Shown piece by piece: positions 43,648 through 46,814 of a stretch of 64,000 nt of DNA (positions are counted from its first letter, which is position 1; each line of letters starts with the position of its first letter). The DNA comes from Diadema antillarum (Eukaryota): the NCBI RefSeq assembly GCF_040938485.1, contig NW_027271493.1, forward strand, positions 1,364,001-1,428,000, written 5' to 3'. The notes beneath the pieces were generated by a model. That model did not search any database. It saw only the letters and a program-made list of their open reading frames with translations, and had not been told where the DNA came from. Made by a program: the position numbers and the translations under genes.

Positions 43648-43813
43648 GTCTAACATTTAGCGTAGCTGATTGTTGAGAACCGGAAATGATGCACTGTAGC
43701 GTCTTCCCATGATGATCAGCGGAAGGAGTGAAGGTCAACACACTTTCGATGTTGTAATAAGTCTTGTAGTGATAGCAGCGATCCGTGCAGTAATAGGGTC
43801 GAGAATAGTAATA
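43648..43813 (-). CDS. Gene 2: C-terminal half of the split N-terminal Ig domain
   Basis: YYYSRPYYCTDRCYHYKTYYNIESVLTFTPSADHHGKTLQCIISGSQQSATLNVR C|gtaagt (phase 1); a possible acceptor ttacag| (phase 0) sits immediately upstream. Confidence 0.8.
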
Positions 43814-46566
43814 CTGTAAGCAGTCCGATGAAATTCTACATCATTTTGCTTTTCATGCCAATTGCCCTCACACTTACTTCATGTCAGATTCGTCGAGTGC
43901 AGTTTCTTCCCGAAAAAAATACTTCCGAAATAATTCATCTCTTGATATGTAAATAAAAATAATCTACGGTTAGAGTACGTAGTAATGTGGATTCACTATC
44001 TTGATAGAATGCAACACAAGATTATTTCTTAATATCAGATGACATTGCTGGCTAATCTTTTCTCTCTTTTTTTTTTTTCGTTTCTCTTTTATATCGACAA
44101 AGATTAATGTCGGTAATGACAGCAATAATATATTCCATTCGATACCTTGCTGTTCACATCAATCTTGCCATATCGTCGATAATAAGAATGAATAGCCGCT
44201 TACTCTACGGCCTAAAATCAGTAATTCATTTCTGAAATGATATAAAATCAGCTGAAAATGTAAGTGTGTCGAACGTTATCCATGTAGGACATTCAACGTG
44301 ATGGCTTTCGCTGTAGTGAAAAGGCAGAAAAATTCGAGCCACCCAGCGGAAGAAATTACTCTTTCCTACGTACATGCGTTGGGTGTTTATTTCCAAGACA
44401 ATCTTTAATGCATCCCACTTTGTCTGAATTCAGTTGCCTAAGCCTCCAAGTTGTAGGATGAGAATTACAATTTTTGCCGGATACACTACCGTATCAGAGG
44501 CGCCGATGAAGAGCGTAGTGTTTCTGCCACTGGCACGAGCCAATCGGTGTGAGGGGTATGTCGTGTATGTCGCCCGGTATGTTGTTCGGTTTAATCTCAC
44601 ATCCTTTGGACTAAATAAGTCAATCGTAGATTCTGCGCAAGGTAAGTTTACCTAATTCATTTAGATTTAATAACAAAGACAATGATTTGAATAGATGTGA
44701 ATTCCTCATTACTCACACCAGCAAATAAAATGGTTTATACCTTCTTATATTTCGAATTTTTGGTATCACTTGTGTTGTACAGTATATATGCCACATCTCC
44801 AATTTTACAACAAAATCTTACCTCATCTCAAGGCTAGTAATTCCTTATCTTAAAACCACAAGCATTCCTGAAACAAATCCCAGACTGGAAATACTCCAAA
44901 TGCAAGACAATCCAAGAATCTTCATTGTTAGTTTCAGGCTATCCAGTGGGGACACTCCAACCTATATTAATCAACCAGCCAAATGGGAAGAAACATTAAG
45001 GCTATTTTGCAAGATATATCTATTCGTACTGGTTTAGAAGCCAACGCTCAGTAAATTTTGAACTCGAATAATGCTATTCATTTTGCCTATATCACGACAA
45101 GCGGATTTCAGTTTCGTCTTGACGAAAATCTGTAAGTCTAAAGGCCATGCTATATACAGTAACTTAGAATGGTCTAATTTGGGCAGGTTGTCGTCTTCCA
45201 ATACTCTCAAAGCATGCCAAGTAACTATTTGGACGGAAAAGATGACATTTTCAACGTTCTATTTGGAGAAAGAATAAAACCTCTATATTCAAGATATTCT
45301 TCAAATCCTGTTCTTCATTTGACTACCATCACGCATTCACGTGTATTCAATTTTGGGGCAACTGAAGCATTTTTTTTACGTCTCACCGTTATGTGGTATC
45401 AAACTTCACTTCCGTCGGTGTGGGAACATAAACGGACAATTTGTATTTCAAAATGATGTCATCCTAACTTTTTTTTTTACGATCGTCATCAACATGGAAT
45501 AGATCTGACACGATAAGTGAAGAAATGACTCCAAGTACGACGACCTCTACCAAAATATTGTCATTTCCGTTTGGAGTGGAATAGCAGAAATATCCGGCTT
45601 TCTTGAAATAAACCAAAGCTTGTTTTCTGCAAATGGAGTGTCTGCCGCAGCTAAAGATTCATCGTACTTAACCTTAACTGTATTCTTTAAGTCGTTTAGG
45701 TAATTGCCTTGTATCTTTCTTTGTTTATCTCTTTACTCCGTCCTTCCTAGAACAACATAGAGAAGTCGATTCAACGCTTGCACTTTCTGCCTGAGGTGTT
45801 TCTAAACGCTTTTACCAACATGACCAGAAAAACAGCATATTCCTCCCCAAATGATTGTCCATGTTACTTTCAAATCTGATGATTAGTTTCATAAGACATG
45901 AGAGTCTGTGTTTTGGGGACATTTAAAACGATATCATTCCCAGGGATTGAAATACGGGGAGTTTTCTGTGGCACATGAGTTTTGCGACACAAAGGTCACT
46001 TCCGTCTTCAATGTCTGTCATGAGACTTCCTCGTTTAATAGATCTTTTGACATTGGTTGTTTGTCTAGAGGTGTGTAATAGGGCCTAGCCAGTCTCTCTG
46101 CTCTCTGTTTTGGCATTGCCCATTCATATTACTTGTTTGGTATGCTTATCAGTATTCTAATTGCTATACTTACAGCATAACCGGAAATCCATTAAATTAT
46201 TTAACTTCCAGACAGGATTATCTTTTACCAAATTCACCAATATACCAAACTTTTCATGTGTAGTCCTTGTTTGGTGCATTGTTACTTTCATCATCAAGCC
46301 CCGGTGCTGTCTCGGCACCGTATGGTTCCTGAGATTTAAAAAATGAGATTAAATCAAAATATGTCAAGGTGTTAACCATCCTTCCAGTTGTAAGACAGAT
46401 TAACTGGGCAGAAATCCATCCTAGTAGGCAGGCTTTTCTATAGAAAATTACCTGCTTACATGTCCCTCATAGCAGGTGATCTATACGTATATCAGCAGAT
46501 GAGTATCATCTTGTTCTGATTATCATACTGAGATTGCATTTCGGAACGTCATCTTATTTTTTCCGG
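43814..46566 (-). other. 2,753-bp spacer inside the split Ig domain of gene 2
   Basis: Paralog of 12058-14810, same length. Confidence 0.7.
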
Positions 46567-46814
46567 TCAGCCTAAATAATGGTGAGCGTAGGAGCGGTAT
46601 GTATCTGTAGGTCGAGCCGATTGAACATTTCCTTGGTATCCCCATCCTTTGTCTTGTCGAGCCTGATTGCTATTTGTGACCACGCCCTCAGTGATCTGGA
46701 CGCCGTCCAAGAACCAACTCGCTGTCTGTGACTCGAGCACTCCACTCTCCGTACACCGCGCAGTGACTTGGCTGTTAGCCGTCAGGGTACTTGGTACATT
46801 GACAGTCACGGCAA
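46567..46814 (-). CDS. Gene 2: N-terminal half of the split Ig domain
   Basis: ctatacag|TT GCC (phase 1); VAVTVNVPSTLTANSQVTARCTESGVLESQTASWFLDG...GYQGNVQSARPTDTYRSYAHHYLG*. Confidence 0.8.

What the first reader, a model, noticed from the sequence alone, without database searches (positions are those of the whole stretch)
43770..46640. Variable Tyr/Cys/His/Trp-rich tips on both sides of the gap suggest a stalk-and-knob loop
Seen: the break falls between the D strand (VVTNSNQ) and E strand (YNIESVL). Both strands are extended by invariant sequence (ARQDKGWGYQGNVQSARPTDTYRS; YCTDRCYHYKTYY). Amino-acid differences between copies cluster at the codons nearest the gap, often as multi-base changes (TATHW versus YAHHY; YCYSNPSY versus YYYSRPYY). 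Established: alternating aromatic residues on a descending strand with a Cys-rich tip is the architecture of bovine ultralong CDR H3. Inference: a convergent protruding, diversifying ligand-binding loop, here on the D-E hairpin.
Basis: partly seen in the sequence, partly recalled or inferred. Interest (0 to 1): 0.72.

Follow-up and report, generated by a model that had tools for sequence, protein, structure and literature searches.

The report
Hypervariable loop in split urchin Ig domain
In a huge, Diadema-only family of sea-urchin surface receptors, the outermost antibody-like domain is encoded in two pieces, and the codons next to the gap are tyrosine-rich and differ from copy to copy far more than the rest of the gene. 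This looks like an inherited binding loop, but how, or whether, the two pieces are joined in the RNA is still unknown.

Summary
The window comes from the Diadema antillarum hifiasm v0.4 assembly. On its minus strand are two tandem copies (about 31.8 kb apart) of a receptor gene: signal peptide, split Ig domain, four-cysteine stalk repeats, TM.

- **Position of the split.** Half 1 (46815-46570) matches Ig strands A-D and half 2 (43813-43649) matches strands E-G, so the 2.75-kb gap lies in the D-E turn.
- **Conserved parts.** Across 22 copies, ARQDKGWGYQG (dN/dS 0.04) and C[TS]DRCYHYKTYY (0.09-0.18) are nearly invariant.
- **Variable tips.** The codons touching the gap vary in length (2-10 and 4-12 codons) and in sequence. 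They are 23-44% Tyr, contain no stop codon, and are less conserved than the intron.

The stalk-and-knob reading is only partly supported:
- AlphaFold2 gave pLDDT below 50 for this domain in both database models that join the halves.
- Cysteine counts are often odd.
- Nobody has seen the joined product.

The gap is the family's old D-E intron. Sister subfamilies keep a GT donor there and nest an SRCR exon in it. This subfamily has lost the adjacent GT in 16 of 21 copies, yet both halves stay under purifying selection. No single joining rule keeps the reading frame.

Other notes of this scan already record the split and the SRCR relatives. My best reading is a germline loop that differs between gene copies and is joined by copy-specific splicing.

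The parts
47397..47450 (-). Probable signal-peptide exon of gene copy A (MAVIMVMYWMSLFLVHSC)
   Evidence: Weak tblastn match to the signal peptide of P0054. The equivalent exon of copy B is at 15431-15481.
46570..46815 (-). Half 1 of the split Ig domain (strands A-D plus loop extension). It has a phase-1 acceptor, tatacag|TT, and its open frame ends at a TGA at 46567-46569.
   Evidence: Framework dN/dS is 0.09.
46630..46662 (-). Proximal 'ascending' segment ARQDKGWGYQG, nearly invariant
   Evidence: dN 0.023 and dS 0.586, giving dN/dS 0.04 across 21 copies.
46591..46629 (-). Distal segment NVQSARPTDTYRS, under moderate constraint
   Evidence: dN/dS is 0.42. The GT of its Val codon (46626-46625) is the only canonical in-frame donor in copy A. 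The equivalent GT is the donor used in model P0054.
46576..46590 (-). Tip 1 (YAHHY in copy A), hypervariable
   Evidence: 2-10 codons long among copies. In six close copies it carries 37.5 non-synonymous against 0.5 synonymous differences.
46556..46574 (-). Conserved boundary element TAGGCTGACCGGAAAAAAT at the start of the spacer
   Evidence: Its 11-nt core AGGCTGACCGG is present in 21 of 22 copies whatever the reading frame; the A-rich tail varies. The element is shared with the sister subfamilies and with D. setosum. It supplies stop codons in two frames.
43814..46569 (-). Spacer, the family's D-E intron. It is not a dispersed repeat and holds no SRCR remnant.
   Evidence: An RNA-like contig from run X11 lies on 46233-46475.
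45551..45601 (-). Mini-exon-like module KAGYFCYSTPNGNDNIL with AG and GT flanks
   Evidence: One contig of run X6 joins half 1, then 45595-45551, then half 2, with a boundary exactly at the GT. The AG and GT are present in only 4 of 22 copies.
43817..43828 (-). Conserved 3' element TCGGACTGCTTA (family pattern CGGAC-YNYN-TA)
   Evidence: It sits in three different frames relative to half 2. It is partly complementary to the 5' element, but the predicted pairing is weak.
43790..43813 (-). Tip 2 (YYYSRPYY in copy A), hypervariable and 44% Tyr across the family. It follows the acceptor cttacag|TAT.
   Evidence: dN/dS is 0.83 in six close copies.
43754..43789 (-). 'Descending' segment CTDRCYHYKTYY, nearly invariant
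   Evidence: dN/dS is 0.09-0.18 with synonymous variation.
43649..43813 (-). Half 2 of the split Ig domain (loop extension plus strands E-G), with the phase-1 donor AGAC|GTAAGT
   Evidence: A contig of run X11 is spliced from 43649 to the next exon.
28935..40861 (-). Remaining exons of copy A. Stalk repeats: 40861-40601, 40356-40075, 39493-39218, 38494-38219, 31419-31201, 30365-30078. TM exon: 29090-28935.
   Evidence: tblastn of P0023 and P0054. AlphaFold2 scores the stalk repeats at pLDDT about 70-94.
14814..15056 (-). Half 1 of copy B (tip TATHW). This copy happens to have a GT donor, TTG|GTTAGG, at 14821|14820.
11893..12061 (-). Half 2 of copy B (tip NYCYSNPSY). The acceptor catag|G at 12062|12061 is in frame with the copy-B donor.

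Best explanation
The two pieces are the exons of the membrane-distal Ig (C1/C2-like) domain of a Diadema-specific, tandemly amplified type-I receptor. Its layout is signal peptide, split Ig domain, a run of four-cysteine Ig-like stalk repeats, a TM helix and a short tail. The gap is the family's ancestral intron in the D-E turn.

In this subfamily both exon ends have grown into the loop. On each side a strongly constrained segment leads to a short Tyr/Ser/Thr/Cys-rich tip. These tips change by substitutions and in-frame indels at or above the neutral rate while staying open.

The result is a long D-E (HV4-position) insertion of roughly 45-60 residues whose apex differs between germline copies. 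That makes it a paratope-like loop diversified across hundreds of gene copies, not within cells.

**Shown:** coding constraint on both halves, hypervariability of the tips, and the position of the split.

**Inferred:** that the halves are joined by RNA splicing through copy-specific or weak sites; which tip residues reach the protein; that the loop protrudes; and that it binds ligand.
For: - **Position and fold.** Half-domain matches to Ig strands A-D and E-G.
- **Family size and range.** At least 150 half-1 matches lie in tandem arrays, and the only proteins found at over 50% identity are annotated Diadema antillarum or D. setosum.
- **Selection across all copies.** dN/dS is 0.04-0.18 in frameworks and proximal segments, against an intron divergence of 0.50.
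- **Selection on recent branches.** pN/pS is 0.17-0.18 in each half for nearest-neighbour pairs, including copies with no canonical splice path.
- **Tips.** No stop codon in any tip of the 21 copies (about 250 codons by my count); Tyr is 23% and 44% of tip 1 and tip 2; length changes within a frame class are multiples of 3; conservation is 0.5 against 0.7 for the intron.
- **The gap is an intron.** At the same position, sister subfamilies have a GT donor, an SRCR exon in phase 1/1 and an AG acceptor. Models P0066 and P0069 link half 1 to half 2 there.
- **Transcription.** A contig of run X11 shows half 2 spliced to the next exon.
- **Joined forms.** Copy B and a few other copies have in-frame GT-AG paths at the boundaries. 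One annotated model joins the halves using GT-AG sites only (P0054). One contig of run X6 has the halves adjacent.
Against: - No transcript that joins the halves of this subfamily was read directly.
- 16 of 21 copies lack a GT within 2 nt of the conserved boundary, and 3 lack any in-frame AG.
- Joining at fixed points leaves the frame at 0, 1 or 2 in about equal numbers.
- The one annotated joined model drops tip 1 and uses a mini-exon whose AG exists in that copy only.
- AlphaFold2 gives pLDDT below 50 for the joined domain in two models.
- Tip 2 shows dN/dS of about 0.8, which fits relaxed selection as well as diversifying selection.
- The tip-1 excess rests on 15 nt in six related copies.
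Confidence: 0.5

Rival explanations
1. The variable tips are mostly not in the protein. Splicing uses sites inside the conserved parts, for example the GT of the Val codon right after GWGYQGN, together with an AG before or inside half 2. On this view the tips are exon-proximal intron, or alternative exon extensions, and they vary because little constrains them.
For: - In copy A the only canonical in-frame path is AAT|GTTCAA to cag|TAT.
- Model P0054 uses exactly this donor.
- Model P0023, for the window gene itself, enters half 2 at AAG|ACT.
- The joint in the X6 contig falls at 46628, within 1-2 nt of that donor.
- Tip 2 has dN/dS of about 0.8.
Against: - The GT after GN is present in only 15 of 22 copies and varies like a Val/Ile/Thr/Ala codon.
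- The distal segment has dN/dS 0.42, and CTDRCYHYK has 0.14 with synonymous changes.
- There are no stop codons in the tips, and tip-1 lengths avoid one frame class completely.
- A second X6 contig keeps half 1 through RPTDTY.
Confidence: 0.2
2. The halves are joined at the DNA level in somatic cells by an imprecise, V(D)J-like or other programmed rearrangement. On this view the conserved boundary elements are the signals and the tips are coding ends.
For: - Coding ends of variable length and frame abut invariant non-coding elements.
- The combined frame is 0, 1 or 2 in 6, 7 and 6 copies.
- Most copies have no canonical splice path, yet are under purifying selection.
- A low-depth contig (3.9) with adjacent halves occurs in run X6, whose size is that of a genome.
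- No germline joined copy exists in the assembly.
Against: - The elements have no CAC heptamer and no 12/23-spaced nonamer (my reading).
- The same element starts an ordinary GT-AG intron in sister subfamilies.
- No target-site duplication or microhomology exceeds the cross-copy controls.
- The spacer is not a mobile element.
- The X6 contig could come from RNA, from a Hi-C ligation (a GATC lies at the joint), or from an assembly chimera.
Confidence: 0.05
3. The halves are never joined. Half 1 is the last coding exon of a short secreted product (signal peptide plus half 1, about 108 aa) that ends at the stops in the conserved element, and half 2 belongs to other transcripts.
For: - NCBI models XP_071489834.1 and XP_071499056.1 end at the element's stop.
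- The element supplies TAG and TGA in two frames.
- An RNA-like contig lies just downstream of half 1.
Against: - Half an Ig fold is unlikely to be stable alone.
- Half 2 has no start codon or signal peptide of its own, yet is under purifying selection.
- The frame class that would stop at once at TAG is never seen.
- In the sister family, models link half 1 to the SRCR exon and half 2.
Confidence: 0.08
4. The N-terminal domain of this subfamily is decaying. On this view the copies are splice-dead pseudogenes that are kept alike by gene conversion.
For: - The GT is lost in most copies.
- Framework dS (0.12) is far below intron divergence (0.50), which suggests homogenisation.
- Annotation models of these genes are chaotic.
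Against: - The proximal segment has dS 0.59 with dN 0.023, which gene conversion cannot produce.
- Nearest-neighbour pairs lacking a canonical path still show pN/pS 0.17 in each half.
- Neither half carries a stop or frameshift in any of the 22 copies.
Confidence: 0.05

Closest known systems
Diadema 'SRCR-in-Ig' receptor subfamily
   Same: - The same split of the N-terminal Ig domain at the D-E turn.
- The same conserved element at the start of the intron (TAGACTGACC... there, TAGGCTGACC... here).
- The same four-cysteine stalk repeats, TM and tail.
   Different: - The sister genes keep a GT at the boundary in 18 of 19 sampled copies and carry an SRCR exon in the gap.
- This subfamily has no SRCR exon or remnant, has lost the adjacent GT in most copies, and has Tyr-rich variable tips in its place.
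Bovine ultralong CDR H3 (stalk and knob)
   Same: - A long insertion at the distal end of an Ig domain.
- Alternating aromatic residues on the descending side (CYHYKTYY here, YxYxY in cattle; PMC7232318).
- Variable numbers of cysteines near the apex.
   Different: - The loop is different: D-E here, F-G (CDR3) in cattle.
- The domain here is C1/C2-like, not a VH.
- The diversity here is between germline copies, whereas cattle make it somatically from one V-D-J rearrangement.
- Cysteine totals here are low and often odd.
- No structure supports a stalk here.
HV4 (D-E) loop of TCR and shark IgNAR V domains
   Same: The same topological position, at the same end of the domain as the B-C and F-G loops. 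HV4 is a recognised extra variable loop (established knowledge).
   Different: HV4 is a few residues long. This insertion would be 45-60 residues and is interrupted by an intron.
Large diversified immune gene families of sea urchins (SpTrf/185-333, TLR, NLR, SRCR)
   Same: A lineage-specific tandem expansion with variation concentrated in a presumed recognition part. For 185/333, mismatches between genes and messages are described (papers listed; PMC13511894).
   Different: No sequence relationship. Here the variable part is a loop of an Ig domain. I found no paper on this family.
V(D)J gene segments with recombination signal sequences
   Same: Coding ends of variable length and frame next to conserved non-coding elements, on both sides of a spacer inside an Ig domain.
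   Different: - No heptamer or nonamer.
- The split is at the D-E turn, not at CDR3.
- Relatives have an ordinary intron at the same place.
- No rearranged DNA was shown.

Membership tests
Immunoglobulin superfamily, C1/C2-set domain | Profile match to Ig constant-type domains across strands A-G | tested here: met
   Half 1 matches C1-set positions 3-62 (E 0.011) and CL, TCR C-beta and MHC II beta-2 chains (E 0.0014 and weaker). Half 2 matches C2-set_2 positions 55-85 (E 7e-4) and CD22 (E 0.0017). Each Pfam match falls below the curated cut-off, but together they fit one domain.
Immunoglobulin superfamily, C1/C2-set domain | B-strand Cys, C-strand Trp and F-strand Cys | tested here: met
   The Cys of ARCTE, the Trp of SWFLDG and the Cys of LQCII are invariant in alignments A6 and A7.
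Immunoglobulin superfamily, C1/C2-set domain | Folds as a beta-sandwich | tested here: inconclusive
   AlphaFold2 gave pLDDT below 50 for residues 1-119 of P0041 and 1-159 of P0054. The alignments for this domain were shallow and not diverse, and the junctions of both models are uncertain.
Bovine-type ultralong stalk-and-knob loop | Two-stranded beta-ribbon stalk extending from the domain | tested here: inconclusive
   There is no confident model.
Bovine-type ultralong stalk-and-knob loop | Alternating aromatic residues on the descending strand | tested here: met
   CYHYKTYY is nearly invariant in alignment A7. The bovine motif is YxYxY.
Bovine-type ultralong stalk-and-knob loop | Disulfide-rich knob (several, usually paired, cysteines) | tested here: not met
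   There are two invariant Cys (CxxxC) plus 0-3 in the tips. By my count the total is odd in 13 of 21 copies (counted).
Bovine-type ultralong stalk-and-knob loop | Located in CDR H3 and diversified somatically | tested here: not met
   The loop is D-E. The variation seen is between germline copies. Somatic variation was not testable here.
Diadema split-Ig / SRCR-in-Ig receptor superfamily | N-terminal Ig domain split at the D-E turn, with the conserved TAGRCTGACC element after half 1 | tested here: met
Diadema split-Ig / SRCR-in-Ig receptor superfamily | SRCR exon between the halves | tested here: not met
   Pfam finds no SRCR in the spacer ORFs. tblastn with SRCR-bearing relatives hits only half 2. 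This is therefore a separate subfamily.
Diadema split-Ig / SRCR-in-Ig receptor superfamily | Four-cysteine stalk repeats, TM, short tail | tested here: met
   The repeats are predicted as beta-sandwiches with pLDDT about 70-94.
V(D)J-type rearranging gene segments | Heptamer (CAC...) and A-rich nonamer separated by 12 or 23 bp next to the coding end | tested here: not met
   The boundary elements are TAGGCTGACCGGAAAAAA and CGGAC-YNYN-TA. There is no CAC at the coding end, and the A-run starts about 12 nt from the coding end.
V(D)J-type rearranging gene segments | Rearranged (joined) DNA in somatic cells | not testable with these tools
   One ambiguous low-depth contig in run X6. The one read-laying run allowed had been used.
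U12-type (minor spliceosome) intron | 5' /RTATCCTT and the branch site TCCTTRAY | tested here: not met
   The intron starts (A/T)TAGGCTGACC, and no branch-site match lies near the 3' end (my reading).
DNA transposon insertion (TA-flanked, terminal inverted repeats) | Dispersed copies, terminal inverted repeats, target-site duplication | tested here: not met
   The spacer matches almost only the same position of family members. Duplex energy of its two ends is -7.9 against -5.8 kcal/mol for controls. Direct repeats at the ends do not exceed the cross-copy controls.

The most novel reading that the evidence does not exclude
The halves are joined by something other than ordinary splicing. The candidates are a programmed, imprecise DNA joining in immune cells, or a splicing step that depends on RNA editing or RNA structure and is guided by the two conserved boundary elements. 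Under the DNA-joining version, each cell could create its own junction sequence in the D-E loop from variable-length coding ends. That would be a second, independent invention of junctional diversity in an Ig domain, in an echinoderm.
Probability: 0.06. Interest if true: 0.95.

Novelty: new variant of a known kind. Interest (0 to 1): 0.6.

Why it matters
Diadema antillarum has been hit twice by mass die-offs, and its immune repertoire is essentially undescribed. This family numbers in the hundreds of copies, was found only in Diadema, and places its most variable, Tyr-rich sequence at the distal tip of an Ig domain. That makes it a strong candidate for a germline-diversified recognition receptor.

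It also poses a clear molecular puzzle. Two exon halves are under purifying selection, most copies lack a usable splice donor, the non-coding elements at both edges of the gap are deeply conserved, and no single joining rule keeps the frame. Solving how they are joined would either reveal unusual splicing or, less likely, a new way of assembling an Ig domain.

Tried and rejected
- **A fixed splice rule.** I tested every donor offset from -8 to +7 against AG, AC, TA, AT and GG acceptors. None works in all copies.
- **Specific non-canonical intron types.** GC-AG and AT-AC each keep the frame in only some copies; U12-type consensus sequences are absent (my reading).
- **A conserved mini-exon in the spacer.** The module at 45551-45601 has AG and GT flanks in only 4 of 22 copies and shows no conservation peak. 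The WSKKDS mini-exon of P0054 has its AG in one copy only.
- **SRCR remnant in the spacer.** None found.
- **Transposon origin.** The spacer is not dispersed in the genome.
- **Target-site duplication or microhomology between the tips.** Longest shared string is 4.33 nt within a copy against 4.22 nt between copies.
- **A terminal RNA stem between the two elements.** Only about 0.8 SD better than controls.
- **A germline copy with joined halves or a short spacer.** None found.
- **Structure prediction.** Both jobs gave pLDDT below 50 for the domain.
- **Alignment A4.** It misplaced the half-1 rows, so I replaced it with A5.
- **Exact look-up of P0002.** It returned nothing.
- **The joined step.** I did not hand the two window halves to any tool as one protein, because the rules forbid it. 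The database models P0041 and P0054 were used instead.
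Full report
**Where we are.** The window is G000:C605:1364001-1428000 of a 1.75-Gb, 2,963-contig assembly. Contig lengths attached to NCBI proteins and the description in PMC13511894 identify it as the Diadema antillarum hifiasm v0.4 assembly, GCF_040938485.1, in which the two haplotypes are not fully collapsed. Some of the 'copies' below are therefore alleles or haplotigs. A self-comparison shows a tandem unit of about 31.76 kb at 77-96% identity. The window thus holds two gene copies, A and B, plus the 3' part of a third.

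**Checking the observation.** All features lie on the minus strand.
- Copy A, half 1 is 46815-46570. Its acceptor is tatacag|TT in phase 1, and it reads VAVTVNVPS...ARCTES...SWFLDGVQITEGVVTNSNQARQDKGWGYQGNVQSARPTDTYRSYAHHYLG followed by TGA.
- Copy A, half 2 is 43813-43649. It follows cttacag|, reads YYYSRPYYCTDRCYHYKTYYNIESVLTFTPSADHHGKTLQCIISGSQQSATLNVR, and ends at the phase-1 donor AGAC|GTAAGT.
- Copy B is at 15056-14814 and 12061-11893, with TATHW and NYCYSNPSY at the tips.
- Pfam places half 1 on C1-set positions 3-62 of 86 and half 2 on C2-set_2 positions 55-85 of 89.
- Profiles built from many copies hit strands A-D of lambda CL, TCR C-beta and MHC II beta-2 (E 0.0014 and weaker), and strands E-G of a CD22 domain (E 0.0017).

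These matches are weak but coherent, and the canonical Cys, Trp and Cys are invariant. The break is therefore at the D-E turn. From established Ig topology, that turn lies at the same, membrane-distal end as the B-C and F-G loops, and it is the HV4 position of TCR and IgNAR V domains.

**The gene and the family.** Annotated Diadema proteins and tblastn give this layout: signal peptide, split Ig domain, a run of roughly 90-residue four-cysteine repeats, TM, short tail.
- AlphaFold2 predicts the repeats with confidence (pLDDT about 70-94).
- Half 1 has at least 150 matches in the genome, arranged in arrays with about 30-kb spacing. A sister type has at least 128.
- A search of 1.84 billion representative proteins found only three close clusters. 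All are NCBI models annotated as D. antillarum or D. setosum.
- I found no paper on the family.

**Variation across 22 copies.** Both halves are intact in all 22 copies and lie 1.2-3.7 kb apart.
- Column conservation is 0.95-0.99 in the frameworks, about 0.7 along the spacer and about 0.5 at the two tips.
- Pairwise Nei-Gojobori estimates:

| Region | dN/dS | Note |
|---|---|---|
| Half-1 framework | 0.09 | dS 0.12 |
| ARQDKGWGYQG | 0.04 | dS 0.59 |
| Next eight codons | 0.42 | |
| CTDRCYHYKTYY | 0.18 | 0.09 in the six closest copies |
| Half-2 framework | 0.18 | |
| Intron (Jukes-Cantor distance) | n/a | 0.50 |

- The high dS with very low dN in the proximal segment cannot come from gene conversion. 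These codons are translated and constrained in every lineage.
- Nearest-neighbour pairs give pN/pS of 0.18 and 0.17 for the two halves. This includes pairs in which neither copy has a canonical splice path.
- Tip 1 is 2-10 codons long (Tyr 23%, Thr 21%). Tip 2 is 4-12 codons long (Tyr 44%, Ser 12%, Cys 9%).
- No tip contains a stop codon (about 250 codons by my count).
- Tip-1 lengths fall in two frame classes only. Five distinct lengths are congruent to 1 mod 3, three are congruent to 2, and none to 0.
- In the six closest copies the five tip-1 codons carry 37.5 non-synonymous against 0.5 synonymous differences. Tip 2 has dN/dS 0.83. These counts come from few sites and from related copies, so I read them as 'at least neutral, probably diversifying at tip 1'.

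**The gap.** Two non-coding elements bound it.
- The 11-nt core AGGCTGACCGG of TAGGCTGACCGGAAAAAA follows tip 1 in 21 of 22 copies whatever the reading frame. It is read as LG-stop, IG-stop or RLTGKN.
- CGGAC-YNYN-TA precedes tip 2, again in three different frames.
- The same arrangement exists in D. setosum.
- Joining at fixed points relative to these elements leaves the frame at 0, 1 or 2 in 6, 7 and 6 copies.
- No donor offset combined with any acceptor dinucleotide works for all copies.
- Three copies have no in-frame AG at all. Only five have a GT within 2 nt of the element.
- Copy B is one of the five. TTG|GTTAGG at 14821|14820 pairs in frame with catag|G at 12062|12061.
- Copy A has only one canonical in-frame path: AAT|GTTCAA, after GWGYQGN, to cag|TAT.

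**Why I still call it an intron.**
- A paralogue on C25 has AGC|GTAGTCTGACAAAAAT and tcacag|AATCGGAC in the same phase.
- In the sister subfamily the element reads GT(T)AGACTGACC, and 18 of 19 sampled copies keep the GT.
- In one sister locus I worked out the path in full. The donor is A|GTAGAC in phase 1. An SRCR exon follows, ttacag|TG...GAC C|GTAAGT, in phase 1/1. The acceptor is gtgtgaag|GA in phase 1.
- Sister-family models link half 1 directly to half 2 (P0041, P0066) or through the SRCR exon (P0069).

The split is therefore ancestral, and the element is the conserved start of that intron. This subfamily has lost both the SRCR exon and the adjacent GT. The spacer is not a dispersed repeat and has no SRCR remnant. 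Its ends show neither target-site duplications above control nor a convincing terminal stem.

**Evidence from RNA and annotation.**
- The single read-laying run showed that run X11, which behaves like RNA, has a contig spliced from 43649 to the next exon. It also has a contig from the C25 paralogue that carries tip-2-like codons upstream of CTDRCY, and a contig inside the spacer at 46233-46475.
- Run X6 comes from organism B, apparently D. setosum. Its library type is unknown and its size is that of a genome. It has one contig of depth 3.9 in which half 1 (up to 46628) and half 2 (from 43780) are adjacent, with an unknown stretch between them.
- X6 also has one contig of depth 16.1 that runs half 1 (to 46597), then 45595-45551, then half 2 (from 43807). 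Its boundary at 45551|45550 is exactly a GT.
- These contigs may be cDNA, retrocopies, Hi-C ligations (a GATC lies at 43780-43783) or assembly chimeras.
- NCBI models disagree with one another. Some stop at the element (P0001, P0002). Some skip half 2 (P0004, P0022, P0024; for P0022 a chance GT is used). Some start in the spacer, including P0023 for the window gene, whose first exon is ATGGATAAC|GT at 44283-44275.
- Only XP_071501700.1 (P0054) joins the halves...GWGYQGN | WSKKDS(D) | SECSIEGESILPDRIYCYYCTDRCYHYKTYY... It uses GT-AG sites only. It drops the distal segment and tip 1, and it reads the 3' element as coding. I could not check whether RNA-seq supports it.

**Structure.** I folded the two database models that join the halves instead. 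In both, the split domain came out at pLDDT below 50: residues 1-119 of P0041 and 1-159 of P0054. The stalk repeats in the same models scored about 70-94. It is not a refutation, because the alignments for this domain are shallow and the junctions are uncertain.

**Verdict.** The D-E position and the 'conserved flanks, hypervariable Tyr-rich apex' pattern are real, and they fit a germline recognition loop that differs between gene copies. The bovine stalk-and-knob analogy rests on one sequence motif and is otherwise untested or not met. The most interesting open point is the mode of joining. Both halves are under selection, most copies lack a usable donor, the boundary elements are deeply conserved, and no rule preserves the frame. 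I put ordinary but copy-specific splicing first and a non-splicing mechanism at about 5-8%.

Noticed in passing
window 8180-9460: A minisatellite with a period of about 73 bp (self-matches at offsets of 74, 147, 219 ...), 77-92% identical between units, including some inverted matches.
   Followed up: no
window 16495-19468, next to the N gap at 16116-16272: Two 1.49-kb units at 99.5% identity, with an inner period of about 370 bp. They lie between gene copies A and B and are absent from the equivalent place upstream of copy A.
   Followed up: no
G000 contigs C605 and C778 (loci L031-L050): The two contigs look like haplotigs of the same array but differ in the number and order of gene copies. 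C778 has three extra copies between the counterparts of L046 and window copy A. This suggests copy-number variation between haplotypes.
   Followed up: partly
Start of the spacer in all subfamilies (window 46556-46574; L051, L054, L056, L063, L068-L084): The first 20 nt or so after half 1 (TAG-R-CTGACC-...-AAAAA) are better conserved between subfamilies than the exons are; half 1 is only about 40% identical in protein. The function is unknown. The motif supplies TAG and TGA in two frames.
   Followed up: partly
NCBI models P0003, P0020, P0069: The annotation fuses the tail of one array member to the signal peptide and half 1 of the next (P0003, P0020), or reads SRCR exons out of frame (P0069). 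Gene counts for this family in the public annotation are unreliable.
   Followed up: partly
window 46233-46475: A 246-nt contig from the RNA-like run X11 lies inside the spacer at 98% identity. It could be a retained intron, a 3' UTR of a short half-1 transcript, or an independent transcript.
   Followed up: no
window 44820-44875 (minus strand): The closest copies share a strong acceptor (gatttgtttcag|) and a perfect donor (GATGAG|GTAAGA) around a 46-nt stretch that has stops in all frames. It may be a non-coding or poison exon in the spacer.
   Followed up: no
stalk exons, e.g. window 40601-40861 and 39218-39493: The four-cysteine repeats have no Pfam match, yet AlphaFold2 folds them confidently as beta-sandwiches (pLDDT about 70-94). 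This agrees with another note of this scan on a Diadema-only Ig-like stalk domain.
   Followed up: partly
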